Below are positions 1-54,500 of a stretch of DNA of 64,000 nt, piece by piece. Origin of the DNA: Cycas panzhihuaensis (lineage: Eukaryota; Plantae; Cycadophyta); NCBI GenBank assembly GCA_023213395.1, contig CM041465.1:195183741-195247740 (forward strand), given 5' to 3'. The stretch's first letter is position 1. Every line of letters begins with the position of its first letter. The position numbers were made by a program, and so were the translations under genes. Under the pieces are notes generated by a model. The model was given only the letters and a program-made list of their open reading frames with translations, was not told where the DNA came from and made no database searches.

Positions 1-2030
1 TCTACTTGGACATGGCCAAGCATTTTCTAGAACCTTCCATACAACATGGGAGATTTTAAGGATTGAGATTTTGTACTACATTTGGAAAATTAGGAATACT
101 ATGTTTTTTAAACACAAAGCACCCATTGCATGTTTACAAATGAATTGTTTTTTACAATGATCAATGAATGTTCTTTGTAGATTAATGCCTAGGCCAGAAA
201 GATCTAAATGGAGCAGTATGGGCTTTGATCGCCTCTTGACCTAAATGAATAACGGGGCTCCACTTCTTGTATTATCAACAAGGTTTCTTGAGAGACTGTA
301 GTAGGTTACTCTCGAAGCTGCAACTGCAACAAGGATAGGAGGATTGAGAGAAAGCCCCCAAGGGATAGCAAACCCAAGGCAAAACCAACTAACAACAAAC
401 CCAAGGCAAAACCAATTAACAACAAATGGTGGAATGCCCCTACGCTAGCCATAACCATTTTACCATCAAGAAATAATGATAGGTGGAACACTGAGAGAGC
501 ATAGCAAGCACAAGGTGTGGATGGCTAGCAAACTGCTCCTACACACCCTAGAGAGAAGCCCAAGCAACAGGCACCCAGAAGCAATTCTTGGCCTTGCACA
601 GGTTGCTTAATGATTTGTGGCTCACCGTGGTGGCTTTATGCCATATAATATGTTTGATACTTTGTTGTTATGATACTATGTGTGAGAGTATGTGTATATG
701 CAGGTTGCAGGTCAGGTGTCAAGCCAACCAGAGGCAGAGACTTCTACACGTCAGGATCATGCACAAGGGGACTCGAACATTAGATATATCATGGGAAACT
801 CCCGAGAGAGAAAACCCACCAACACAATGTTTGATATATTAAATATAAAATAATACAGAATGTTTGAGAGGTGAGATGGAGCACGAGAAGACGATGAGAT
901 CACATTGATCTTGAGTTGATGATTGGAATACCAAGGAGGTATGAATAAATATACCTTGAAATGGTACCATGTATGGTCATGCCTCTTCATCATGTCTTTT
1001 TGCCAATGGACACATCCTTTTGCCACACCTACACACACTAATTAACCCTAATGAAGCATTAAGTTATAGTTAACCTAAGTTAACTATCGCTAACACTATG
1101 TATTGTTTTCAACCAAGGTTGCAGGCCACACTTTGTAATCCCGAGATTGTAATTGCCTCCCCTCATCATAATGTCAGTGCCATAGGGCAGAGCTACCAGG
1201 CCACTTCACTCACCATTTTTGTTGCATAGCATGTGATATTTCCAATTTAATGATATCATATTTTCAACAAAATGAAATTGAAATTTAAGAGTCTCTACTA
1301 GAGACAAGGACTAGCAAGGCACTGTACTAATTTCTGACAAGCTGAGTAATAGGTTTCCACTTCCTTGACCCCATACGTGCTGTGAAAGGCAAAGTGTTGG
1401 CAGAAGTTGCCTATGGTGTTCTAAATTGACCAAGACGGTATCCAAATCAGGTAGGTGACACTTATACAGCAAATAAGAATTATACTCATATTCAACGCCA
1501 AATAAACACATATTGGATGTTGGAGCAACTGCCAAATAAAATAGCCTGCAAGACGCATCCCATGCTACAACACCTCCCAGGATGAAACAAGGAAAAAAAA
1601 TAGTAGAAAAATGAACAACATCATAGCATTGGAAACAAATATGCCTTGTTCAATTGAATGTATCAGTTACTATATGCTTATAAATGGAAAAATACAATCT
1701 GATATTTTAATACACCTTGACGAGTTCATAGAAAAAGATTTAAAGAAAAACATGCCAATCGTGAAAAGAAACTTTGCATCAAGAATCACATCGTGCATTT
1801 AAGCGATTATACAACCCTTGTGCTCTTGAAAAAGCCCACTCCTTGAAAATAAATACCATATGTGCTTCCTCTGCAAGAACAGGACCAATGACAGTGGAAA
1901 ATGATGCTTGCAGGTCAGCTATAAAGGAAAGAAGTTACAAGGCAATGCTAAGCTTTAATCCTATTTTAGCGATACCATGAACCAATTAAACATTGCCTGC
2001 ATTTCAGTGAACATAAAACAAAGAATCAAG

Positions 2031-2582
2031 AATCATTGCATGTTTAGCCTAAGTCCTATTTTTATCACATCATAAACTTAGAATCATAGCATGCATTTCA
2101 GTAATCATAAGTCCCTTGAGAATAAATATCAAGATCAGGATCAATGACAGTAGAGAATGTGCTTGCAAGCAAGCTAGAAAGGAATGTAGTTAGAAGGCAA
2201 TCCTAAGCCTAATGCCTATTTGTAGGACAGCTTGAATCTACGATTAAACTGTGGCAATCCTGTGTTTAAATTTTGGTAGCACTGCTGTACAACTTAATTC
2301 CAATCTGAATCATTGCATCTTTAGCCTAAATTCTATTTTTATCACATTATAAACCTAGAATCATAGCATGCATTTCAGTAATCATAAGCCCCTTGAAAAT
2401 AAATATCAAGATCAGGATCAATGACAGTGGAGAAGTACTTGCAGGCAAGCTAGAAAGGAAAGTAGTTAGAAGGCAATCCTAAGCCTAATACCTATCTGTA
2501 GGACAGCTTGAATCTGTGATTAAACCATGGCAATCCTGTGTTTAAACTTTGGTAGCACTGCTGTACAACTTAATTCCAATCT
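2031..2582. repeat. Tandem duplication of a ~277 bp unit (2031-2307, 2308-2582), with a diverged partial copy at ~1836-1976
   Basis: Both units run from aatcattgca...ttagcctaa to ...gtacaacttaattccaatct at high identity. Confidence 0.9.
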
Positions 2583-2730
2583 AAACCAGCCATCATGCCT
2601 CACACAAAAACTTGTTCACTGCATTCAGGGTGCACTCTGTAAGGCCATACCAAAAGAAGCACCATGCCCTCCAGTAAGATGATCACCATGGTAAGCCTAT
2701 GAAAGCACAGACAAACAAGAAAAAGAGAAC

Positions 2731-2847
2731 GGCACACTCCCTACGCAGGCATTACCCTGCTCAGGTTCAAAGGGACTTTCTCAGCCTGTTCCTGTAAACA
2801 TCCCTAGCTTTGCTAGTGGTGGAAACAGGGCAAGCACCCCCGGTGCC
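2731..2847 (-). ncRNA. TPP (THI-box) riboswitch aptamer in the THIC 3' UTR
   Basis: The minus strand reads GGCACCGGGGGUGCUUG-(long P3)-CAGGCUGAGAAAGUCCCUUUGAACCUGAGCAGGGUAAUGCCUGCGUAGGGAGUGUGCC. It has P1 GGCAC/GUGCC, the conserved CUGAGA, ACCUGA, a P5 GCAGG/CCUGC stem with a GUAAUG loop and GCGUAGGGAG. It lies about 450 nt after the THIC stop, as in other land plants. Confidence 0.98.
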
Positions 2848-2875
2848 ACATCAATTAGCAACAGAACATTTAACA

Positions 2876-2992
2876 CTGTAAATGACAAAATGGAAAGATA
2901 AAAGCAATGCTTCCCTACTTTAAAATATGGCATACTTACACCATAACCTGGAGTCTGGATATTAATCATGAATGAAACAGCAGAGTACTCAC
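2876..2992 (-). other. THIC: Predicted THIC 3' UTR intron 2 (riboswitch-associated; alternative donors at 2947 and 2939, alternative acceptor at 2697)
   Basis: Donor AG|gtgagt at 2992 and acceptor ttttatctttccattttgtcatttacag| at 2876. A second strong acceptor, tttttcttgtttgtctgtgctttcatag|, lies at 2697 downstream of the aptamer. Confidence 0.55.
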
Positions 2993-3104
2993 CTACTGGT
3001 GATATGCAAAAATTAAAAGACACACTACATTATCAACAAAGTTGTTTAACTACACCCGAGTTATTGGAATGTGAAATGTCTGATGCCACCACTTGGTTAA
3101 AAAC

Positions 3105-3279
3105 CTGCAAGAAGGCCACCACTGAATTCAATGATATGGATTTTACCAGGCATAATTAGGTATATAATTTGATGCAAAACAGCAGTCTATGGCAAATTCA
3201 ATTTCATTTTAGAAAATGCAGGCAACCCTGCATTAGAAAATAAATCTGTGAATTTCCAAGTAAAAATTAGCTTTTTTAC
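3105..3279 (-). other. THIC: Predicted THIC 3' UTR intron 1 (just after the stop codon)
   Basis: Donor AGAG|gtaaaa 13 nt after TGA and acceptor ccttcttgcag|G, giving 175 nt. An intron close after the stop is known from angiosperm THIC. Confidence 0.7.
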
Positions 3280-3292
3280 CTCTATATAGAGC

Positions 3293-5904
<2,612 letters not shown>

Positions 5905-9150: not shown

Positions 9151-11328
9151 TAGTCAAAAAATAAATTTGAACAAGAGTAATGTCTTCTTCATTAATACCC
9201 CAGGTCATGTCCAAGGCAGGATCAGTAGACTTTTAGAGATGAGCATTAAAAAGCTCCCCACAATTTATCTTGGGCTGCCTCTCTTTGTTGGGAGAATGTC
9301 CAAGGATATGTGGAACCCCCTTTTAGACAGGATGCAAAGGAAGCTGGCGGGCTGGAAAGGCGTTGTTTTCAGCTTAGCCGGAAAGCTCCAGCTTGTAGCT
9401 TCGACGCTGCAGAGCATACATGTATTTTGGATGTCTGTATTCAGGGTTCCAGCGGGTATATCAAACATTATAGAATCTATCCAGAAGAGATTCCTCTGAT
9501 CGGGGGCGGAGAGCAATGATAGAATTCATTTAGTAAGCTGGAATAAAGTGTGCACCCCGAAATGGGCCGGTGGCCTTAATTTGAGAAGGACTTCTCATTT
9601 CAATGTCGCTTTAGGGGCTAAATTGGGATGGCGGTTATTTAAAGGGGGACAGAGACTATGGGTGAAGATCCTGGATAGAAAATATGTTCAAGGGGGTTCT
9701 TTCCTAGGGAATGAGGCTTCGCAAGTTGGTTCAACAGTCTGGAGAAGCATATTAAAAGCATGGAAGACTATAAGGAATGGGTTGAAATGGAGACTTGGTG
9801 ATGGTAATTCCATCAAGTTCTAGGAGGACGTATGGTGCTACGACGTAGCGCTTAAGGATTGCCCGGATCTGGATCCTATTATGGGTCCCTGTGTCAGGCA
9901 ATATGGTACCCATGTTAAGGATTATTAGATCGGGAACGGTAAAAATAGGAGATGGAAGTCCTTCGAGGAAATTCAAACAGAAAGATTGCAAGAAAGCATA
10001 AACAAGTTAAAAACGATTCTCCGTAAGAATTATATTCCTAGAATGCCCTTGCCGGATTCGGTGGTGTGGCCTATGGGCGATCCAGGACTACTGCGGCTAA
10101 ACAAGGATATCATTTCCTTTATTTAACCAGAGGGGATCATAAGAATCCTACCCTTGCTAGTGTTTGGAGGCTCCCTATCATTCCTAAGATCGTCATATTT
10201 TGGTGGACCTGCCTCAGGAACAAAATCCTCACCATAGACAATCTCAAAAAGAGAGGCTTTTCGCTAGTGAATAGATGCCCCTTATGTTGCCTAGAGGAGG
10301 AATCTATGGATCATATATTTATTGGGTGTTCCTTTACAAGAGAGGTCTGGAGGATGTTACTTGGGAAACTGGAGGTTTGCTAGACTTTCTCAGAAAAGAC
10401 TATTGACTTATGGCTTGCCTGGCTTAGCCCTTTCAGAAGTAGAACGTTGAGCCGCATTTGGTTGTGCGCGCTCCCGATATTAGCTTGGAATATATGGAAG
10501 GAGAGAAATCGGAGAAATTTTTAGGGAACCCAGATGGACCAGATTGCCATCTTCGGCAGAATAAGTTTGGACATTAAGGAAAACGTTGGGAACGTGAAAG
10601 AAAAACGTATTTCCTTGTCGGAGAGTAGGATTCTAAGTAAATGGGGTATATAGCCTGATTTTGAGGCGGTCAGGCCCAGATCACGTGATTGTGACCCAGG
10701 AGCCCTGGATCAAAGTTAACTTTGATGGGGCGGCTAAAGGGAACCCTGGGGAAGCAGGTGGTGGGGGTATCTGCAGGGATTGTACCGGCTCCCCAATTTG
10801 GGCTTTTGTGGATTACTATGAATGCCAAACAAACCATTATGCGGAAATGAGGGCTATGTTTAAAGCCCTAGACCTAGCTGCTGATGGAAATGCCCAACGT
10901 CTGATTTTAGAGGGGGATTCGGAGATGGTGCTTAAGGTTCTGAGAGGGGAGGCCCTTCCAGACTAGAGATTACATACCCTTTTTAATGACGCCAAAGAGA
11001 TCATTAAGGGACTGGAGGAAGTCTGTATAAGGCACACTTTGAGAGAAGGCAATAAGCCGGCTGATTTCTTGGCAAATTGGGGAGCAAGGCACCGAGAAGG
11101 TCAAGTGTGGAGAGGTGAGTTCCCTAGGGATCTTATGGTTCTGGTAGAAAAGGATATGATCAGTAATAGCTAGCCGCGGGGCTTGTCCCAGCATTTAGCT
11201 CTCTGGCCTAGACCGTGGGGATGTCACGATCATATATATATTGGTAAGCACAGCGTCTTCTGATGTAATAGGTTGTGGGATCCTGTTCAAACCCACTATA
11301 AATTTATTTTATCTTACCAAAAAAAAAA
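9151..11328 (+). mobile_element. 5'-truncated L1-clade LINE (RT C-terminus, zf-RVT, RNase H), pseudogenised
   Basis: Fragments YLGLPL, PKWAGGLNLR, WRLGDG, KIVIFWW...CPLC...ESMDHIFIGC and WIKVNFDGAAKGNPG. Poly(A) at ~11319-11331. A 13-bp TSD, AAACCATATGACC, at 9138-9150 and 11329-11341. Confidence 0.95.
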
Positions 11329-30141: not shown

Positions 30142-33100
30142 ATATCATCTCAATTCAAGCAAAATGTTAACTATATATTGAAAAGCAAAGAAAATTGGGA
30201 TATATGGTACACTGGAATTAAAAATGCTACAAAGTATGAAGGCCTTTGGAGAGCCCATTTGTAGCCTACACCCAGTACACCAAGCGGCTATAATGCTCGA
30301 GTGGATCCGCTAACGCCTATAGATCTTTGCGTTAAACTACAATGGAAGATAGACGATGAAAAGATTCATACAAGAATTTTGTTGGTCATTGATCACTCCT
30401 TGCATAACTTGATAAACGAAGAGGAACATGATACATCCTGGAAGGTCCTAAAAGTTCTTAGAAAGAACTTTGATACAAAGTCAGATTTAAAATTTGTTCA
30501 TCTTGTTTTGAAAATGAACAAATTAAAAATGTAGAAGGGACGAGCTCATGAGATAATAAATCTCTTTCGACCAATCAAACAGGCAATTGATAAAGACTTT
30601 AAGACCTAATGCATCACTTGGGCATTTTTGATCCAGTCATGTTTACATGTTCCTGATTATAAAAACTTACTTGGAAGTCTTCAATCTAGTGGAACATTGA
30701 AGATACTCAACTTCGAAGAACTTACCGAGAAGTTCATAGAATTTGACAAGACCTTTGATACAAACTTTGTAGCCTCTGACTCTCTTCCAGATGCAACCTT
30801 TGAGGTAGAAGAAGAAGTTTGCTACACAAAAAATCAAGGTCCCTCTCGTGGTAGAGGAAATAACCAAGCAAGAGGAAGAGGAAGAAATATGGGAAATTGT
30901 CCACAAGGTCAATCAAATCCTCAATCACAACCTCGACAGTTTCAAGGCCAAGGGCCACCTCAACAAAGAGCAAGACAGTCAGGTCAAACTAGTACTTCTT
31001 CAGGGACTGGTAATCAAACTATTATATATGATTGGTGTAACCGTAAAGGACACTTAGCAAAAGATTGCAGAACTACCACTTATAAGTTGGCTAAGTTCCA
31101 ACCAAAACATGGAGCTTACAATGTTGAAGAAACTTGTGAAGAATCCTTTAGTGGTGTAGGTTTTGTACAAGCACACATTCAAAGAATTAAGGGATCTTTA
31201 GCATCAAATGCCATTGACCAACCAAAGAGATACTTTGAAGGTCGGTGTGGATATATCACTTGTGAATTCCCTTCACCAATGCCAAGCCCTATTAGAATTG
31301 CTAATAGTGTGGCTCCAATCGATGGACAGTGGATCATGGACATAGGAGCAACTCAACATATAACATGCAATCGCAGTCTATATCAAATATTTGACTCAAA
31401 TATTCATGGAGTTGTTCACATGGCTGATAAATCACAGCAACCTGTTGAAGGAATTGGCAACATTCACCTGAAACTCCCAGGCTTAAAAGATTTTACATTA
31501 CTTGATGTCTTATACATACCCAATCTCAAACAAAACCTACTCTCTTTATCTACACTTGTTTCTCATGGATTTGATCTGAGTGTAACCGCAAATGACCAGA
31601 CTCTTAAGGTCATTCACCCTCCAACTAATCAGGTGGTTTTGACTGGACATCTCTCTGGCAAACTCTTTCGACTAAATGGTTCTCCATCTTCTGAAGCCCA
31701 TTATGCCCAAAGCCCTTGTGCCGATGAAGAATTTGCATTTAATTCCATCTTGACCCATCCAACGTTGTCACCAGAAGCTCTTTGGCATGCTTGTATGGAC
31801 CATGTTCACATTAATAGATGTAGAGATCTTTCTAATACTCTTCCAAACCTTCCAAAGTTTTCCTCTAAGCCCTTTAAATGTGAAGCTTGTATCATTGCCA
31901 AATCTCATGGATAACCCTTTCCCCAAAGTCAGTGGAAATCAAGCCATCCATTACAATTGGTACACTCTGATTTGTGCGGGCCAATGCCCATTCCTTCACT
32001 AAAGGGCAAGCTATATTACATCTCTTTCATTGATGATTTCACTAAAAAAGGATGGGTAGCTTTTCTACACAAGGAAGATGAAGCATTCTGTATATTCAAG
32101 GAATTCAAAGCCCTCACTGAAAAAGAGTCAGGTTATCAACTAAAATGTCTTCGAATTGATAATGGTGACGAATATACCTCACATGAGTTTGAAAGCTACC
32201 TTCGAGACAATGGCATCAAGCATCAAACAACAGTAGTAGGTACCCCACAACAAAATGGAGTTGCCGAGTGCATGAATAGGACAATTATGAACATGGCTCG
32301 TGCTATGTTAATATATAAAAATGTACCTGCCTATCTATAGGTTGAAGCAATCTGGACAGCTATTTATTGTATCAATGTTGTTAGCCCATCAAAGGAAGTA
32401 CAATCACCTAATGAAAAGTGGTCAGGACAAGCCCCCATTGTTCACTACTTTAGAATTTTTGGCTCTACATGCTATGCCCATATTCTGGATACAGATAGAA
32501 ATAAACTCCAGCTAAGGGCATTTAAAGGCATCTTTGTTGGATACCCTATGGATAAGAAAGGGTATAAGGTCTTCATACCTTTACAACGAAAAATCATCGT
32601 TACCAGAGATGTCATTTTTATGGAGACAGAGGACCAGTTACTTAAATTAGACTCCATAGTACCCTCACGCCACTACAATAATGTTATCAAGTATGATGTT
32701 TAGATTCCAAAATTTGGGGATAGACATAAATTACTCCAAATGTTGGAAGCTGACAATAGAGCCTTGGAGGATACAAGTTGTGACTCTGAACCAATGAGTG
32801 CACATCGAGCACCATCTTTTGAAGATAGCAGAGTTGACAAAGGCAAAGCCATTATAGAAGAACCATCCTCTCCACCTTTAATTGATAAAGGCAAAGTAGT
32901 GGTAGAAGGACCATCTTCCTCAGGCACATCAGCATCCTCCTCACAAAATAATCATTTTAATGAACATGATGAGAACCAAGAAGTTGGGGAAATGAGGACA
33001 TCATTCCTAATTCGAGGATCTCAAGAAACCCACCAGCTCAATAAGGACATATGACCGGATGAGGTGGGCAAAACTGGTACTCGAAGTGCCCATAGAGCAA

Positions 33101-34707
33101 GGATGCATGAATCATTATATACTGAGCTTGAACTAGTAGAATTGCACCTTACTCTTAATGACGAGCCCTTAATGTACCGAGAAGCTGTAAAGCATACAGC
33201 TTGGAGAAACGCCATGAACGAAGAGTACCAATCTCTTGTGAAGAACGATACATGGGAGCTTGTTGATCTACCACTTGGCAGAAAGGTAGTTCAAAATAAA
33301 TGGGTGTTCAAAAATAAATATAGATCATATGGCACCCTTGAAAAACACAAGGTGAGGTTGGTAGCTAAAGGATTTACACAAAGGGAAGGCATTGACTACA
33401 CTGAAGTCTTTGCACCTACTACCAAGTGGCCTATAATTAGAACTCTTGTGGACTTGGCTGCTCAACAGGGTTGGAAAATCCACCAACTCGATATTAAGAC
33501 CGCGTTTCTTAATGGAGATCTTGAAGAAGAAATTTACATGGCTCAGCCATAAGGATATGATATCGAAGGTCAAGAGCATAAGGTTTGTAGGCTCAAAAAG
33601 TCCTTGTATGGCCTCAAACAAGCCCCTCGCGCTTGGTTTTCCAATTTGTCTAAAAGGATGAGGCAACTTAGATATGAGGTTTGTGACTATGCAGATATTG
33701 ATGCAACATTGTTCATCAAGCACCATAAAGATAAAGTCACTTATCTCACAATCTTTGTGGATGACATGCTAGTAATGGGTAATAGTGAACAGGCAATAAG
33801 CCAGCTGAAAAAGGACCTTGGCAAAACGTTCAAATTGTCTGATATTAGTTTGATGAAATATTACTTAGGAATTGAAGTAACACAAAAGAATGGAAACTTT
33901 TTCCTCTCCCAAGAAAAATACATCAATGATCTTCTAACCAAGTTTCAATTAGAAGATGCTCGACCAGTGATGTTACCTATGGATCCTAACACCAAACTCT
34001 CAGCTAAAGGTGACACTAGGGAGGCAGCCGCAATACTCTACAGGAAACTTGTAGGTAGTCTCATTTACACTACCAATACAAGGCTAGATATTATATACTC
34101 TGTCAGTATTCTTGCTTGTTATATGACAAATCCTAAGCAAAATCATTGGAAAGCAGCAGTGCGAGTGTTGAGATACCTTAAGATGACCAACAAATATGGT
34201 CTGTTGTATGAACCTAATTTAGACTTCAAGCTTTCTGCATATACAGACTCAGACTTTGCAGGAGATAAAGATACAGGAAGATCTATGTTTGGGTATGTAA
34301 CGTTTCTTGGAACAGCACCAATATCATGGAGATCCAGATGGAAGAAGATAGTTGCAGATTCAACTACCAAAGCTGAATACATTGCTGCTTCTAAGACCAG
34401 TAAAGAGGTGATATGGCTAAGAAAATTATTAGAAACATTAAATATCACCCAAACAAGTCCTACAAGTCTTTATGTGGATAATCAATCAGCAATCTGCATG
34501 GTAAAAAATCCTATATTTCACGATCGTACCAAACACATAAGTACGAAAGTCCACAGGATTAGGGAACTTATTCATGATGGCACAATTTAATTAGATTACT
34601 GCCCTACAACAGATCAAGTGGTCGATATCTTCACTAAACCACTGTAAAGGGTGAAGTTTGAACAGTTCCGAAGGCAGCTCGGCCTTAGGGCCTCCATCTT
34701 CGATTGA
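30142..34707 (+). pseudogene. Copia gag-pol with several premature stops
   Basis: Zinc knuckle (Y/C)DWCNRKGHLAKDC, protease WIMDIGATQH, GAG-pre-integrase LWHA, integrase VHSDLCGP and [26 protein letters not shown] and FVDDML, RNase H YTDSDFAG. Confidence 0.95.
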
Positions 34708-38634: not shown

Positions 38635-41600
38635 CCACCTTAATTATCGACTTTATCCTCTAATTATGCAGAATCTTAACTTCCATCAGTGACATTTGCT
38701 TCTCCTTGACGTTATTAATATTCTCCCTGATCTTTGTGAAGATAATGTTAAAGATAGCATTCAGATCCATCCGTCTCTCCTGAAAGATCCTTCTTTTTCT
38801 TTCCTTCCAAATGTTCCACGACAGCATTGGGAAAGCACTTTTCCACAAGTTGCCTAATAATCTACTCCTGAAAGGACTTTGCCAAGAAGACTATTGGTCC
38901 TTAATGTTTCTAGAAAATATCCAATTCACCTCTAATTTATTGAGCAGAAGCCCCCAAAACTCTCTAGAGGAGGAACACCAGAGAAGAATATGATCCACGG
39001 ATTCCTCCTCTTTACAACAAAGAATACACTTATTAGTCATGTGAAAACCTCTCTTTTTGAGATTATCCACAGTTAGAATTTTCTTCCTAAGATATATCCA
39101 CCAAAAAACAATAATCTTAGGAATGAGATCTAGTTTCCAGACCCCTTCCAAGGTCTAATTCCTCTGGTCCCCTCTCTCTAAACAGAGGAAGTGATATCCC
39201 TGCTTGACAGTGTACTCCCTAGAATGGTTTGAGGGCCATACAACTGTATCTATCATCATTGTCTTTGGAATATAGTATTTGCCAAGAATCTTTTTGAGTT
39301 TAGTGAGACCTTCTTGAGGTAAAGACTCCCACTAGAGTTCATCGAAATTCCTCTAATTTCTGGCTCTCTCCCTCACAATCCAATAGCCTTTCATGTAAGT
39401 GTCAAATAATCTTTTACATAGGGCCTAAAGGGGAGTTAAAACTGGACAGTGCTTTAGGCCTTTTTCACTACACTAAGCATCCTCCCAAAATTTTATAGTA
39501 TTTCCATTACCCAAACTCCACTTCAAACCAGCTCTCACCATGTTTCAAGCTTTAAGTAGGCTCCTCCAAACAACTGAGCTAGAGGGGGGAACCACATTCT
39601 TAAGGAGATAGCCACCTTGAAGATGCTTCTGAAATAGGATCTTCTCCCATAGTCCCTCACCACCTTTGACTAGACGCCAACCCAGCTTGGCCACAAGGGC
39701 AAAATTAAATGTTGATATTCTTCTAAGATTTAAACCGCCAACCCATTTCAGTGTACAAACTTTATTCCAGCTTACCAGGTGAATTCTATCCTTTTCCTCA
39801 ATGCCAGACCAAAGGAATCTCTTCTGGATGGACTCCAAGATAGTGAAGATGCCAAGTGGCATTCTAAAAATGGACATCCAAGATATTGGGATACTTTGTA
39901 AAGATGTAGCCACAAGTTGAAGCTTCCCCACTTGGCTGAGAAGGGCCCCTTTCTAACCTGCCAGTTTCCTTTGAATTCGGTCAATGAGAGGGTTCCACAT
40001 ATCCTTAAATATCTTACCTATAAAAAGGGGCATACCAAGGTATGATGTAGGCAGCTTCTTGATTTCCATTTCTAAAATTCCACTAAACCTTCTTTGGGTA
40101 ATCCCCAAGGTATTTATAAAGTAGACATTACTTTTATTCAGGTTTACCTTTTGGTTTGTGGCCAATTTGAAGCTTCTCAAGCCTTCTTTAATCTTGGAAG
40201 CCTCCTTGATGGTTGATTTTCCTAGAAATATGTTATCATCCACAAATTGGTGGTGGACAACATTGTCCACCCCAGTTGTTGGTCGTAAACCTTTAATAAG
40301 CCTTTGTCTTTTTGTAGCCTCCATGGCTCTGCCCAACATTTCTATCATGGAAATATAGAGGAAGGGAGAAAGGGGATCTCCTTGTCTCAATCCTTTATAG
40401 CCCAGAAAAAATCAGGATGATGTGCCGTTGATGATAATTGAGTATTGGGGGCTAGATATGTAGAGCTTAATCCAAGCCCTCTATTTCGCGCCAAACCCAA
40501 ATGCCTCTAAGCACTCCAAAAGGCAATCCTATGAGACTTTATCGAAAGCCTTCAAGAGGTCTATCTTAATAAGCATCGCGGGCTCCTTCCTCTCCTTTAC
40601 TGAGTAGATTGTTTTATGAACCATAATAATACCATTAGTAATATGTCTGCCTTGGACAAAGCCATCTTAATTCTGAGAAGTTATGCAGGGCATGATCTTT
40701 TTTAATCTGTTGGCTAACACCTTAGTTAAGATCTTGTATTTAATATTCCAGAGGCTGATAGGATGGAACTACTCCATCCACTTTGCCCCTTCCTTTTTTA
40801 GAATGAGAATTAGAAATGTGGCTTCCCATTCTTGAAGGATCTTTTGATTTGAATGAAACTCCTACATCACCTCCATGAGATCATCCTTAATAATGTCCCA
40901 AAATTCCTAGAAGAACCCTAGAGGAAAACCATCCGAGCCCAGAGCTTTATCCCTCTTCATGCCAAAAACTGCCAATTTGACCTTATCCTATGTGAACAAA
41001 AGCTATCAACTAGGAATTTTGAGAATCGTCGACCAAACTGAGAATGTTCCTTAGAAAATCCTTTCTAACATCCTTGTCCCCCCCTTGCGGTTCAACAAAT
41101 AAATCTTTGAAATAGTCACTAGCAAGGTCCTTCAAATCTTTAATGGAGTTTACTACTAAACCATCTTTCCTTTGAAGACTAGTGATCCTATTACTCACTT
41201 TATGCTTTACTGTAGTCATGTGGAAGAATTTAGTGTTTCTATCCCTTTCAACAAGCCAAATAGCCCTAAACTCTTGCCTCCAGTGAATTTCTTCTTTATT
41301 AAGTAGCTCCTCTAGGTTTTCGACGAAGTCCCTTTCTGTTTTGTCCAAAGCTTGGGATCTACCCTCCTATTGAATCCTACTCTCGATTTCGTTCAAGTCC
41401 TTGATGGTTTGATCCTTGAGAGAATGGATGTTCTAGAATACATTCTTATTCCAAGCTTTAACTTGCCTTTTCACCCAATTTAACTTCTTCAAGAATTTGT
41501 ACATGGCATGACCCTGTATTTTGACATTCTACCATTCCTCGACCTTTTTCTGGAAGTCTGGGTGTCTGATCCATATCATTTCAAATCTGAAGGGGGATCC

Positions 41601-47100: not shown

Positions 47101-49123
47101 AAGAAGGATTCCTTTATATAGAATCCAGATGCTAAGTTAACATTCTAAATATTAAAATCTTCTATGACCATTGCACAAGTATTTGCAACTCTAAACCTCT
47201 CCCATCCATTCATGATTGAATGTGATGCATCTGAAATAGGAGTAGGAGAAGTACACTTATAAGAAGATAAACCATTGGCATATAAAAGTAGGAATCTTAA
47301 TGCATGAGAATGACTCAAACCTATATATGATAAGGAAATATTAGCCATCATGCATGCCATACATCAATGGTGTTAGTATCTCCTTGGAAATAAGTTCATA
47401 GCAAAAACAGATCATAACAACCTAAAATACATCCTCAACCAAAAATTGCTCTCTAACAAACAACAAAAGTAGGTGAGCACACTTCAGATGTTCAAATTTT
47501 CTATCCTCAATAAAAAGTAGAAAAGAGAATATCACCGTCGATGCTTTATCCAAAATTCTAGTAAAAGATATTAAAAGCAACTTCGCCACCCTATAGAGAG
47601 CATCACCATAGCAATGCCATAATAGATTGAGGAATTAATCTGAGTTGATATCAATGACCCTTGCTCTTAAGAGGAATTATAGGAAATCAAAAGGGGCAAT
47701 AATACCAAATATAATCTACAAGGGAGGATAATTATGAGAAAAGGAAAAGTATTAGTGCCATTAGTTTTAAATATCAAAACAAAAATTTTAGAGGATGTAC
47801 ATTGTTCCATAATTAGAGGATAGATGGGAATTAACAAAACTTATTGACAAATTTGGGATACCATTTTCTAGAAAGGAATCAAAATAGATATATATAAGTT
47901 CATTTATGAATGTGGTACCTATTAGAGAAATAAGAGCAAAATCCTAAAAATCCCTAGGTTGCTCTAGCCAATACATATACTAGAACAAAAGTAGGAAGAG
48001 ATCTCAATGGACTTCATCACAAAGTTATCAAAATCTAAAGGGAAATATGCTAATTTTATGGTATTTGATTATCTAACCAAATACACACACTTTAGAGGAA
48101 CATAAATACCGACTAAAACTATTCAGATAATAAATATATTTATAAAAGGAATCTATTGCCTCTACGATTTCCCAAACATAATTATTAGTGATATTGGCTC
48201 AAAATTCACAAGTAATTTTTGGTAAGAATGATTCAAAATGGTAGGTACAAAATTGAACAAATATGGCCTATCAGCCTCACATAAATAGACAAATAAAAGC
48301 CATTAATAAATGTTTGGAAGGCTATTTATGAAATTTTACTTCTGAGATAATATCAATGGCATAAATGGTTCTATTTAGCTAAATGGTGGTACAATACTAC
48401 TTATCATACCACAATAAAGATGATATCATTTCAAGCTTTTTATGGTTTTAAACCACCCTCCATTCTAACATGGTCAAAAACCTCTAAAGTATAAGTTATA
48501 CAAGAGCATTAGGAGTATATGTAATAAATGCTTAAGCTTTTAAGGAATAATCTAAACATTTCCTAGAACAGGATGAAATAACAAGCAATCCTCCATATAA
48601 TAAAATAATCATTCAGTCCAAGAGATTGGGTTTTTCTTTGACTTGAACCTCATAAGTAAATAACATTAAAATATTTTGGTCAACATAAATTATAAATAAA
48701 TTTTTTTAGCCATATAAAGTAATGGCCAAAATAGGAGAGGTAGCTTATCAAATGGAATTACCTCCTATAAGTCACATCCATAACACATTTAACATAAACT
48801 ATCTTGAACAAAAGCTCAAAAAGGATATAATGCCTCAAATAGACTTACTCATATTAGATGAAGAAGACAAGCTCACAATTGAACTAGAAGGTATCTTACA
48901 GGTACATCTTAGGAGGCTTCATTTAAGAGAAATTAAGGAATATCTCATTAAATAGAAGCTGTGTGAAAATATTAACAAAACCTAGGAGTATGAAGAGTGG
49001 ATATAGCATTTATCAAAGTTAGCCATGCTTTGATACCAAAGCATATTTTCAGGGGAAGGGACTTGTAGAGTTCTAAACACTTTTGGAAGGTTAATTGGCT
49101 GACCTTTCATAAGAGTAGAAAAA

Positions 49124-51058
<1,935 letters not shown>

Positions 51059-51592
51059 CTTCTTTTTAAGAGTATTTTGGCATACTTCTAATATACGTTT
51101 AAGTGGGTTTTTGCCTCTTTCTGGCTGATTTCTATTAAGGGTTATTTGATTTCTTATGTAAGGAATATCTTGGCCCTCCTTTGGGCATCGTTCACTACAT
51201 CCTGGATTGCCATATTTTGGGCCTTTGGGACTATTTTGTGTAGGGCTCCTTACCTTAAAGAGGGATCCATTCTCAACTATATGTGCAAGACCTTCTAGTA
51301 ACATTACACTTATTCAATTTATGCTCTATTTCTGCCATTTATCTTTCATATAAAAGTATTACTCTTATAAGTTTATATTATTGTTTATTATTGCAATTTT
51401 AGTAAGATTATATTATTATTTAATTGCTACAATTTGTACCTTATAGGTGTATATTATGTGTATTTATCTATTTTTGGAGTAATTATTTAAAATGTTATCT
51501 AGAATGAATCAGTAAACTTATTACAAGATTCTTAATGGAGGAGATATATAGATTAAAGGAGTTATCAAAATTTAATAAAGTGAAGGTAGGAG

Positions 51593-54500
51593 TGAAAGAG
51601 GTTAATATATCAAGGTTATTTGTGTAGATTAATTATGTGAGCTTAGGATATATTGTTAGCATTAGTCTCTTAATGAAATGTGTTTTATGTGCATTTAAAT
51701 GTAATTTCATGTTCATGGTATTAGGCAAAAAAATTCTAACCCTAATACTCACCCTCAATAATAAAAGGTGAAATCTCAAAGAGGGAGTCATTATTCATTC
51801 TCACCTCCAAACTTAACTCTCATATCTTGTTTCATCTCATTTTCATTCTCCAATACTTTTGTGTGCATGTGAGTGATTTATTCCCTAGATCCATCCTTCC
51901 TTCATGTAGTATCAAAGCTAAAAGGGGATCTATTCACTCCATTCCACTTGCATGGAGTCATTTTAGCTCTCCTTCACCTTCAATATAAAGTATTGAGAGT
52001 GCACTCATTATTTTTAACAGTTTGAGAGCTTAAAATTATATTACTTTGTATTTTGTTATTTTTTCTATGTGTACAAAATTTTAAAGGTGAGGAATATATG
52101 TTTTTGAAGTCATTCAGTTGTCGGAATAGTCCCAGAAGTATTAAAGGCCTAAAATTTCATGAAAATTTTAACCATCTTAGATTTTAACAAAATTTGACAT
52201 GTAATGTCTCATTGACTAAAGGATCATTTTTTTCTTTTAGAGTAGCTTTAGATTCAACCTATAATAGTGATTTTGGGCAGAGATAAAAGGTTAAAATTTG
52301 TAGATAAGTGACTTAAGCACTTTTCCCAATGATATCCTTTAATTATATGCTAAAAATATTAAAATTTTTTCAAGGGATCTAGTAGATTTATGTCTTAGGA
52401 TCATTTTAAGATAAATCTCATTAAATTTCATCTACCGATTAGTGAGATCTATGCAGTTTTCTCACGGATGCTGAATTTGTCTACTCAACCCCACAAAGGA
52501 CATTGTGAGGGTGTTTTGGGCAGTTTTTGGCTGATTTTAGAGATGGTACAGAAGAAAAAGTTGATGTATGTGTTAAGATGTAACTTTTAACATATTGAAG
52601 TTCAGATTCTAAGAGAATGGATCTGGCAAGATTATACTTTTGTGCTTTTTTTAGGTAAAAATTTTTTATGCCTTTTTAAAAATTTAACTTCACTACTCTA
52701 TCAGAAACGATATTCTAAATACTTTTTCCTTGTACCATAAATTCAAATTTCATCATTTAGGCCTTTATATTTGTGATTTTTAGATAATTTTACCCATTTA
52801 TTATTATTTATAAATTTTGTGAAAAAATCACAAAATAGAGTAAAATATTATGCATCTAGATTTAGAAAAATTAGTATCTTAGTGGTAAGTTGATCCACAT
52901 TTTAGCCCATTATGGTTTTTGTATTAAAATGTCTAAAAATATATTTGGAAACATTGTTCTAAAAGCAAGGAAAATCTTAGATCAGAAGCAACATCCAGTT
53001 CCCTTGCTAAATCTAGCATGCTTTTTCTATTTGCATACATAGCATAAAGCATCACAAAAGTAGTAGTAACAAAAAAGTAAGCACAAAAAGTAAATGAGAG
53101 CATTTGGTAATTTTCTATTTTAGTTTTTAGTTATTCGAAAACATCTTACATTATTCCTAAAAGAAATCTCATCTGTACGATCTATCTTGCCAATTCTTGA
53201 CTTGTACACACATTCACCTTGGTTGAAATAGACCACAGTTGGTCAAAGTTTGGGCCCTAAGGGAGGTGTGAGTTTTATACTGGGTCTGGTCTTAATTGGA
53301 ATAATGGTGGAGGGACAGGTTCGCCATACCTATGGCCTCCAATAAGGGATAATCCTGATACCTACCCAAGAAAACTAAAAACCTTAATGTAAGATTAAAA
53401 TTAACGTGGTCCAATATCCATCATAGCTATGGGATATGCACGTACCATTTGACTCTTCGGAGGAGATATATAGTTACTCACTAGTGATCTGAGTGAGGAC
53501 TGGGAGTACTTGGGCTCCACTATGACTTGGATTTTATCACCAAGTGTAGGTGTGGGTATTATGGGTGAAGGCCCTAATCGTATACTAGAAGCTTTAGGCA
53601 TCAAAACCTCACCTATATTTGGACATAAGTGATAGGTTAGTGGCATGACACATCACCACTCTTTGCTAGCTCTACATTAGGCCTTATTCTTGTATCATTT
53701 CTTATACTCATTTTTCATAGTTATTGAAAAATACTTAATCATTGCTTATTTGTTATCATAGCATTTATTTCTACATCCCTACTATACTAGGTGTACTAGC
53801 CATATGTGTTAGTGGCACATACTTCTATCATCTCTTCTACTTCTTTATCATCACCATGTCATCTCAATTCAAGTAGAATATCAACTGCATATTGAAAGAC
53901 AAAGAAAATTAGGATTTGTGGTACATTGGAGTTAAAATGTTACAAAGTATGAAGGCCTTTGGAGAGCCCACTTGTAGCCTATACCCATCATACCTATAAT
54001 AGCTATAACACCTGTTTTTGGTGGATCTGCCCCAACAACTCCTACAGATGCTACATCCAAACTATAATGGGAGATAGATGATGAAAATATTTGTGTAGGA
54101 ATTCTATTGGTTACTAATCACTCATTGCACAACTTGATTAATGAAGAGCAATATGATACAGCCTGAAAGGTCCTTAAAGTTTTCAAGAAGAACTTTGATA
54201 CTAAGTCAAATTTAGAATTTATTCATCTTTTTCTAAAAATGAACAAATTAAAAATATAGAAGGGACGAGCTCATGAGATAATAAATCTTGTTCAACCAAT
54301 AAAATAAGCAATTGATAAAGATTTTAAGACTTAATATATCAATTGGGTATTCTTGATCTAATCATGTCTACATGTCCCTAGTTATAAAAACTTGCTTGGA
54401 AGTCTTCAATTTAGTGGAATATTGAAGACACTCAACTTCAAAGCACTTGTCGAGAAGTTCATAGAATTTGATAAGACCTTTGATACTAACTTTGTAGCCT

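What the first reader, a model, noticed from the sequence alone, without database searches (positions are those of the whole stretch)
2697..2992. THIC TPP riboswitch with a rewired splicing platform: P2 acceptor AG lost, aptamer bracketed by two strong 3' splice sites
Seen: the P2 5' strand reads ACCGGGGGUG, not the ACCAGGGGUG of Arabidopsis. The A-U pair becomes a G-U wobble, so the fold survives but the AG is gone. Established: in Arabidopsis THIC that AG is the regulated acceptor, so TPP-induced splicing cuts into the aptamer and gives a long, unstable 3' UTR. Seen: strong polypyrimidine+AG acceptors lie 28 nt upstream of the aptamer (tttacag|, 2876) and 33 nt downstream (tttcatag|, 2697). 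Weaker AGs lie inside P3. Inference: regulation here may choose between keeping the whole aptamer in the mature mRNA and excising it entirely. That would be a different output logic from the angiosperm model and could leave a functional TPP sensor in mature mRNA. I cannot rule out that this layout is already described for non-angiosperms.
Basis: partly seen in the sequence, partly recalled or inferred. Interest (0 to 1): 0.85.

Follow-up and report, generated by a model that had tools for sequence, protein, structure and literature searches.

The report
Gymnosperm THIC riboswitch lacking P2 acceptor

Summary
A minus-strand THIC gene (stop 3295-3293) has a genuine TPP aptamer in its 3' UTR (RF00059, 64.5 bits, 2851-2720). 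The first P2 pair is G2841-U, not A-U, so the AG that Arabidopsis uses as acceptor is absent. Transcript contigs from four runs (three related species) agree with the assembly. The AGs at 2876 and 2697 have the best pyrimidine tracts of 21 AGs nearby.

The layout is otherwise the canonical seed-plant one. An intron follows the stop (3279-3105, seen spliced). A strong donor at 2992 sits where the angiosperm regulated donor sits and forms a 16-bp duplex with P4-P5. An acceptor-like site follows the aptamer. That downstream site is also present in every angiosperm comparator I fetched, all of which keep the P2 AG, so it is ancestral, not rewiring.

In all four runs the assembled RNA runs unspliced from 3104 to 2553, through donor, aptamer and both flanking AGs. 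No junction or loose end was seen. Angiosperm transcript contigs look the same, and contigs drop rare isoforms.

Most likely this is the known donor-masking switch with the acceptor moved to another AG, probably 2876. Which AG is used remains untested.

The parts
5507..5841 (-). THIC exon 1 (ATG at 5841; transit-peptide region)
   Evidence: ORF. The loose end at 5080 in all 4 runs matches 5510-5535. The exon join gives 663 codons without internal stops (frame check inside a script only).
5078..5506 (-). THIC intron 1, 429 nt, placeable only as GC..AG
4950..5077 (-). THIC exon 2
   Evidence: contig pieces 4948-5080 in 4 runs
4822..4949 (-). THIC intron 2, 128 nt, GT..AG, spliced in all 4 runs
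   Evidence: joint 4819/4948 with cut +2
3280..4821 (-). THIC exon 3: radical-SAM ThiC domain, stop TGA at 3295-3293, first 13 nt of the 3' UTR
   Evidence: Pfam PF01964, 9.9e-185; 93-94% identity to conifer THIC
3105..3279 (-). First 3'-UTR intron, 175 nt, GT..AG, starts 13 nt after the stop; spliced in all 4 runs
   Evidence: joint 3102/3278 with cut +2. It matches 'stop codon immediately followed by an intron' in most plants.
2993..3104 (-). 3'-UTR exon between the first UTR intron and the candidate regulated donor
   Evidence: contigs
2979..2996 (-). Candidate regulated 5' splice site CAGUAG|GUGAGU (GU = 2992-2991) and switching strand. It pairs with 2745-2761 of P4-P5.
   Evidence: 16-bp duplex, -23.4 kcal/mol for the 26-nt donor segment, z -3.1, 2/500 shuffles. 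-29.4 kcal/mol for 39 nt, with 20/3000 random window 39-mers as good. It is the pairing chosen in the MFE fold of 3010-2725. Same position (-146 from P1) and near-identical sequence to the Populus-like donor AAGUAG|GUAAGU at -138.
2934..2939 (-). Second donor-like GUAAGU, in the loop of a local hairpin; no evidence of use
2876..2895 (-). Acceptor-like site uuuccauuuugucauuuacAG|U, 28 nt before P1. The candidate intron 2992-2876 is 117 nt and 65% AU.
   Evidence: not seen used
2731..2847 (-). TPP aptamer P1-P5 (Rfam hit 2851-2720); P3 is long (about 50 nt)
   Evidence: MFE of the aptamer alone reproduces P1-P5, -48.7 kcal/mol
2841..2841 (-). G at the first P2 pair (G-U). Arabidopsis-type aptamers have A here, which makes the acceptor AG.
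2786..2813 (-). AGs inside P3 (2813, 2808, 2804, 2792, 2786); possible aptamer-destroying acceptors
2697..2730 (-). U-rich tract plus cauAG|G, 33 nt after P1. The homologous element is present in all angiosperm comparators.
2030..2582 (.). 276-nt tandem repeat (2.0 copies, 93%) in the distal transcribed region. It causes the contig break at 2553-2582 and the 'skip 277' in run X2.

Best explanation
This is the canonical seed-plant THIC 3'-UTR TPP riboswitch, in a gymnosperm-like genome. Without TPP, the strand around the donor at 2992 pairs with P4-P5 of the aptamer and hides the 5' splice site, so the 3'-UTR intron stays in. With TPP, the aptamer closes, the donor is freed, and the stretch downstream of it is spliced out. 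As in angiosperms, this is expected to change 3'-end formation and lower THIC mRNA.

The one real difference is that the Arabidopsis acceptor AG at the P1/P2 junction does not exist here (G2841). The acceptor must therefore be another AG. My conditional odds are: 2876 about 45% (first strong pyrimidine-tract AG after the donor, at the border between AU-rich and GC-rich sequence; the aptamer stays whole), 2697 about 30% (the aptamer is removed whole), an AG in P3 about 25% (the aptamer is destroyed, as in Arabidopsis).

Shown here: aptamer, gene, UTR intron 1, loss of the AG, transcription through the aptamer. Inferred: donor masking, TPP response, acceptor choice.
For: The aptamer passes Rfam's threshold with all conserved ligand-contact positions and folds as P1-P5 on its own. 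It lies in the 3' UTR of a THIC gene, with an intron right after the stop that is spliced in 4 of 4 runs, as reported for most plants.

The donor at 2992 is positionally and sequence-wise homologous to the donor of Populus-like and grass THIC UTRs (-146 against -138 to -155 from P1). It forms the best duplex with P4-P5 in the whole upstream 420 nt (-32.4 against -27.7 for the next best). This duplex is the MFE pairing. The only substitution in it among the related species (2985 C>U on the RNA, run X2) keeps the pair as U-G.

The mechanism of donor masking by P4-P5 is taken from PMC3597705 and PMC10226581. G at the P2 position is frequent in functional bacterial aptamers (29/113), so the sensor should still work.
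Against: No contig in 4 runs shows any junction from 2992 or 2939, and no loose end lies at 2992, 2876, 2792 or 2697. So splicing of this intron is not demonstrated in this lineage.

There is no AAUAAA between donor and aptamer, whereas the angiosperm comparators have GUAAUAAAA there. A removable poly(A) signal is therefore not evident.

The duplex statistic is moderate (20 of 3000 random 39-mers of this window do as well). In the grass comparators the same test gives nothing, so duplex strength alone is not diagnostic.

No gymnosperm comparator could be fetched.
Confidence: 0.68

Rival explanations
1. One reading: the riboswitch governs a choice between the acceptor before the aptamer (2876) and the one after it (2697). 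The mature mRNA then either keeps a whole, functional sensor or loses it entirely, a different output logic from angiosperms.
For: Both sites have the best pyrimidine tracts of 21 AGs in the region. The P2 AG is absent. Processed RNAs carrying the whole aptamer exist.
Against: In the plant riboswitches that have been studied the regulated element is the donor, not an acceptor. The downstream site is conserved in angiosperms that keep the P2 AG, so it is not a compensating novelty. No junction to either site is assembled in 4 runs. Nothing in the fold suggests TPP-dependent occlusion of either AG.
Confidence: 0.07
2. Regulated splicing has been lost or is negligible in this lineage. The aptamer-bearing, unspliced 3' UTR is the main mature form. 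TPP acts, if at all, through 3'-end choice, stability or translation without removal of an intron.
For: In all 4 runs the only assembled form runs unspliced from 3104 to 2553. In run X15 the UTR contig that includes the aptamer has 55% of the depth of the CDS contig (325 against 594). The canonical acceptor is gone. No AAUAAA lies between donor and aptamer.
Against: The same intron-retaining, aptamer-bearing contigs are assembled for grasses, where the switch is accepted to work (L098, L053). Contigs hide minor and unstable isoforms. The aptamer and the 16-bp donor/P4-P5 complementarity are fully kept across three species, which argues for selection on the splicing switch.
Confidence: 0.17
3. 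The G at 2841 is an assembly or sequencing error, or this is a decaying gene copy, so there is nothing to explain.
For: None found.
Against: Four runs from three coded organisms cover 2841 without a differing letter. The CDS is intact (663 codons, no stops), spliced and expressed at depths of 83-1777.
Confidence: 0.01

Closest known systems
Arabidopsis thaliana THIC 3'-UTR TPP riboswitch (Wachter et al. 2007; Bocobza et al. 2007, as summarised in PMC5853225, PMC3597705 and PMC10226581)
   Same: Same gene. The aptamer is in the 3' UTR. An intron follows the stop codon directly. A strong donor lies about 140-150 nt upstream of the aptamer and is complementary to P4-P5. The aptamer core is nearly identical.
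   Different: The first P2 pair is G-U instead of A-U, so the acceptor AG that trims 7 nt off the aptamer in THIC-III is absent. No AAUAAA is visible between donor and aptamer. The donor/P4-P5 duplex is longer (16 bp).
Angiosperm THIC 3' UTRs fetched here from metagenomes: Populus/Salix-like L028, L043, L099; Panicoid L007, L053, L060, L068; Pooid L098
   Same: Same order of elements. P3 has a similar length (61 against 63-64 nt from P1 to the core). A U-rich tract plus YAG|G follows the aptamer by 23-35 nt in all of them. Intron-1-spliced transcripts that retain the aptamer are assembled.
   Different: All eight read GCACCAGGGGUGCC (AG present). Contig L007 begins exactly after that AG, consistent with its use as an acceptor; nothing comparable is seen here.
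Neurospora crassa NMT1 TPP riboswitch (Cheah et al. 2007, via PMC3597705)
   Same: A P4-P5 strand masks a 5' splice site in the absence of TPP.
   Different: It lies in a 5' intron and controls uORF inclusion, not 3'-UTR processing.

Membership tests
Rfam RF00059 TPP riboswitch aptamer | Covariance-model score at or above the gathering threshold over the full model | tested here: met
   64.5 bits against 54.3, model 1-105, E 2.3e-10
Rfam RF00059 TPP riboswitch aptamer | Conserved ligand-contact nucleotides (J3-2 CUGAGA; P4-P5 ACCUGA..UAAU..GCGUAGGGA) and the P1-P5 fold | tested here: met
   cmscan alignment; the MFE of 2849-2730 gives P1-P5
Rfam RF00059 TPP riboswitch aptamer | Binds TPP | not testable with these tools
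   Needs in-line probing or ITC
Plant THIC 3'-UTR riboswitch expression platform (Arabidopsis type) | Aptamer lies in the 3' UTR of THIC | tested here: met
   PF01964 9.9e-185, stop at 3293, aptamer 442 nt downstream; one transcript contig joins the CDS and the aptamer
Plant THIC 3'-UTR riboswitch expression platform (Arabidopsis type) | Constitutive intron next to the stop codon | tested here: met
   3279-3105 is spliced in 4 of 4 runs; feature as described
Plant THIC 3'-UTR riboswitch expression platform (Arabidopsis type) | Upstream 5' splice site complementary to P4-P5 | tested here: met
   In silico only:
Plant THIC 3'-UTR riboswitch expression platform (Arabidopsis type) | Acceptor AG at the P1/P2 junction (the spliced form lacks 7 nt of the aptamer) | tested here: not met
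   CCGGGGG instead of CCAGGGG; confirmed by 4 runs; all 8 angiosperm loci have the AG
Plant THIC 3'-UTR riboswitch expression platform (Arabidopsis type) | Poly(A) site inside the regulated intron, upstream of the aptamer | tested here: inconclusive
   No AAUAAA in 2992-2852, where the comparators have GUAAUAAAA. Contigs cannot show 3' ends.
Plant THIC 3'-UTR riboswitch expression platform (Arabidopsis type) | Thiamine/TPP-dependent shift of 3'-UTR isoforms | not testable with these tools
   Only contigs were available; no junction was seen

The most novel reading that the evidence does not exclude
In this gymnosperm lineage the TPP-freed donor at 2992 splices to a flanking AG, not into the aptamer. 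With 2876 the long-UTR product keeps a complete, ligand-competent sensor. With 2697 it loses the sensor entirely. Either way the spliced mRNA differs from the aptamer-truncated THIC-III of Arabidopsis. The conserved acceptor-like site after the aptamer would then be an overlooked functional element of seed-plant THIC riboswitches.
Probability: 0.4. Interest if true: 0.5.

Novelty: new variant of a known kind. Interest (0 to 1): 0.33.

Why it matters
The plant THIC riboswitch is the textbook example of metabolite-controlled splicing and 3'-end processing in higher eukaryotes, and its model rests almost wholly on angiosperms. A lineage whose aptamer lacks the Arabidopsis acceptor shows that the acceptor is not a fixed part of the device, and it gives a natural test of which AG the freed donor uses. 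If the spliced product keeps an intact aptamer, a working TPP sensor would persist on cytoplasmic mRNA. The practical value is modest. The aptamer, the gene and the overall layout are known, and the consequence of the base change is still unmeasured.

Tried and rejected
1. I first read the contig break and depth drop at 2553-2582 as a major poly(A) site 170 nt after the aptamer. I rejected this. The break coincides with the start of a 276-nt tandem repeat (2030-2582). The repeat explains the break, the 306-nt contig and the 'skip 277' in run X2. The depth drop itself stays (6-33% of the upstream contig), but it cannot place a 3' end.

2. The loose end ATGCTTGAG at 3280 in run X15 is a fold-back at the palindrome CTCTATATAGAG, not an alternative exon.

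I could not fetch gymnosperm THIC transcripts or the Taxus and Cryptomeria loci.

4. My single metagenome scan used a core pattern that bacteria share. 112 of 120 loci were bacterial, 8 were angiosperm THIC UTRs and none was a gymnosperm. A more specific pattern would have been better.

5. A plant-specific pattern in viral contigs found nothing.

6. The primary papers are not held: Wachter 2007 (PMC2174889), Bocobza 2007 (PMC2049190) and Bocobza 2013 (PMC3584542). The Arabidopsis facts come from secondary sources. Searches for a gymnosperm THIC splicing description found none.

7. The species' own THIC protein is not in the protein collection at 100% identity.

Exon 3 was searched by reference. 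The exon join was checked for frame inside one script only.

Full report
**What is there**

The minus strand of 5841-3293 encodes a THIC (HMP-P synthase) gene. The large exon matches Pfam ThiC_Rad_SAM at 9.9e-185. It is 93-94% identical to conifer THIC proteins; named members or hits are Araucaria cunninghamii, Taxus chinensis and Cryptomeria japonica. It is about 90% identical to angiosperm THIC. The genome is therefore gymnosperm-like. The species' own protein was not in the collection, so I cannot name it.

Transcript contigs of four public runs (coded organisms A, A, B, E) give the gene structure:
- intron 4949-4822 (128 nt, GT..AG);
- a first intron that can only be placed as GC..AG (5506-5078);
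- an intron in the 3' UTR that starts 13 nt after the stop (3279-3105, 175 nt, GT..AG).

All of these are spliced out in all four runs, which also shows that the runs are RNA.

**The observation**

cmscan finds one family in the 64-kb window: RF00059 at 2851-2720 (-), 64.5 bits against a gathering score of 54.3. All invariant ligand-contact positions are present. The isolated aptamer folds into P1-P5 (-48.7 kcal/mol).

The 5' strand reads GGCACCGGGGGUGC.

Eight angiosperm THIC aptamers that I recovered from metagenome and metatranscriptome contigs (Populus/Salix-like, Panicoid, Pooid) all read GCACCAGGGGUGCC. Oil palm is reported with P2 = AGGGG as well (PMC7390266). Arabidopsis THIC-III lacks the first 7 nt of the aptamer (PMC5853225 citing Wachter 2007), which is exactly GCACCAG.

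G at this position is a common natural state of the aptamer: 29 of 113 bacterial aptamers with the same core have G. Ligand binding should therefore not suffer.

Of the 21 AGs between 2992 and 2650, those at 2876 and 2697 have the best pyrimidine tracts (14/18 and 13/18 Y, 10 U each). They beat the two acceptors of this gene that are demonstrably used (11/18 and 9/18).

**What the layout really is**

Compared with the angiosperm loci, the order of elements is the same:
1. the stop codon;
2. an immediate intron;
3. a short exon;
4. a strong donor about 140-155 nt before P1 (here CAGUAG|GUGAGU at 2992; Populus-like AAGUAG|GUAAGU);
5. an AU-rich spacer;
6. the aptamer;
7. a U-rich tract ending in YAG|G, 23-35 nt after P1.

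The last point matters. The downstream 'bracketing' acceptor is present, and even stronger (14-15/18 Y), in every angiosperm comparator, all of which keep the P2 AG. It is an ancestral seed-plant feature, not a compensation for the lost AG.

The P2 AG of angiosperms itself has a poor pyrimidine tract (6-7/18). Panicoid contig L007 nevertheless starts exactly at the base after it, in line with its reported use.

**The switching strand**

The donor region 2996-2979 forms a 16-bp duplex with 2745-2761 (P4, P5 and the P5 loop):
- -23.4 kcal/mol for the 26-nt donor segment, z -3.1, 2 of 500 shuffles as good;
- -29.4 kcal/mol over 39 nt, with 20 of 3000 random 39-mers of this window as good.

It is the best partner of P4-P5 anywhere in the 420 nt upstream. 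It is also the pairing chosen in the ligand-free MFE fold of 3010-2725. The one substitution within it among the related species (2985, C to U on the RNA, organism B) keeps the pair as U-G.

This is the mechanism described for plant THIC and fungal NMT1: P4-P5 masks a single 5' splice site when TPP is absent (PMC3597705; PMC10226581). It agrees with another first-stage note on 2939-2992.

**RNA evidence**

In all four runs the assembled transcript runs without interruption from 3104 to 2553. It passes through the donor at 2992, the second GUAAGU at 2939, the AG at 2876, the whole aptamer and the AG at 2697. No joint and no loose end lies at any of these places.

In run X15 the UTR contig (3309-2553 minus intron 1) has 325x against 594x for the CDS contig. 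The next contig (2582-2277) has 78x. So between about 13% and 55% of THIC RNA in that sample carries the aptamer.

I first took the break at 2553-2582 for a poly(A) site. It is in fact the edge of a 276-nt tandem repeat (2030-2582), which also explains the 277-nt 'skip' in organism B.

Limits of this evidence:
- These are Logan contigs, which drop minor and unstable isoforms and cannot show 3' ends.
- Grass transcript contigs (L098, L053) show the same form, with intron 1 spliced and the aptamer retained. Retention in contigs is therefore not special to this lineage.

**Most likely mechanism**

This is the known donor-masking switch, with the acceptor displaced (confidence about 0.68).

The candidate intron 2992-2876 is 117 nt and 65% AU, like the verified UTR intron (67%). 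It ends at the first strong AG before the GC-rich aptamer (44% AU). I give it about 45% of the conditional odds. In that case the spliced RNA keeps an intact aptamer. The AG at 2697 gets about 30% (the aptamer is removed whole). The P3 AGs get about 25% (the aptamer is destroyed, as in Arabidopsis).

Against the model: no spliced form is seen, and no AAUAAA lies between donor and aptamer, where the angiosperms have GUAAUAAAA.

Rivals:
- regulated splicing lost, or replaced by another mode of control (0.17);
- artefact (0.01).

**Novelty**

The aptamer is a plain member of RF00059, and the gene context is the known one. The expression platform fails one defining feature of the Arabidopsis type (the P2 acceptor), so I file it as a variant of a known kind.

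I could not read Wachter 2007 or Bocobza 2007 (not held). So I cannot say whether this state is already described or how widely it occurs beyond the three related species.

Noticed in passing
window 2697-2730; L028, L043, L060, L098 (23-32 nt after each aptamer): A U-rich tract ending in YAG|G directly after the THIC aptamer is conserved between this gymnosperm-like genome and Populus-like, Panicoid and Pooid loci (13-15 of 18 pyrimidines). It is stronger than the P2 AG that angiosperms are reported to use. The papers I could read state no function for it.
   Followed up: partly
L007:1-83: A Panicoid metatranscriptome contig begins exactly at the G after the P2 AG (the first 7 nt of the aptamer are missing). 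This matches the reported Arabidopsis THIC-III junction.
   Followed up: partly
window 5078-5506 (-): The first THIC intron (429 nt) can only be placed with GC..AG ends (CAG|GCGAUU ... UUACAG|G), judging from the exon-exon sequence in all four runs.
   Followed up: partly
window 2030-2582: A 276-nt tandem repeat (2.0 copies, 93% alike, with a weaker third copy near 1990-1850) lies in the distal, weakly transcribed part of the THIC 3' region. The organism B contig has one copy fewer.
   Followed up: yes
window 9167-11194 (+): A degenerate non-LTR retroelement: zf-RVT (1.1e-21) and RVT_3/RNase H (1.5e-13) in broken frames.
   Followed up: partly
window 30628-34590 (+) and about 39953-40390 (-): Ty1/copia-type pieces (Pol_BBD, gag_pre-integrs, RVT_2 split over two frames) and a separate RVT_1 fragment.
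   Followed up: partly
window 48000-52000: A stretch of about 20% GC with long ORFs in several frames on both strands and no Pfam match. It is probably low-complexity AT-rich repeat.
   Followed up: no
window 2934-2941 (-): The second donor-like GUAAGU sits where the angiosperm UTRs have GUAAUAAAA (their poly(A) signal). It may be a diverged counterpart of that signal, not a splice donor.
   Followed up: no
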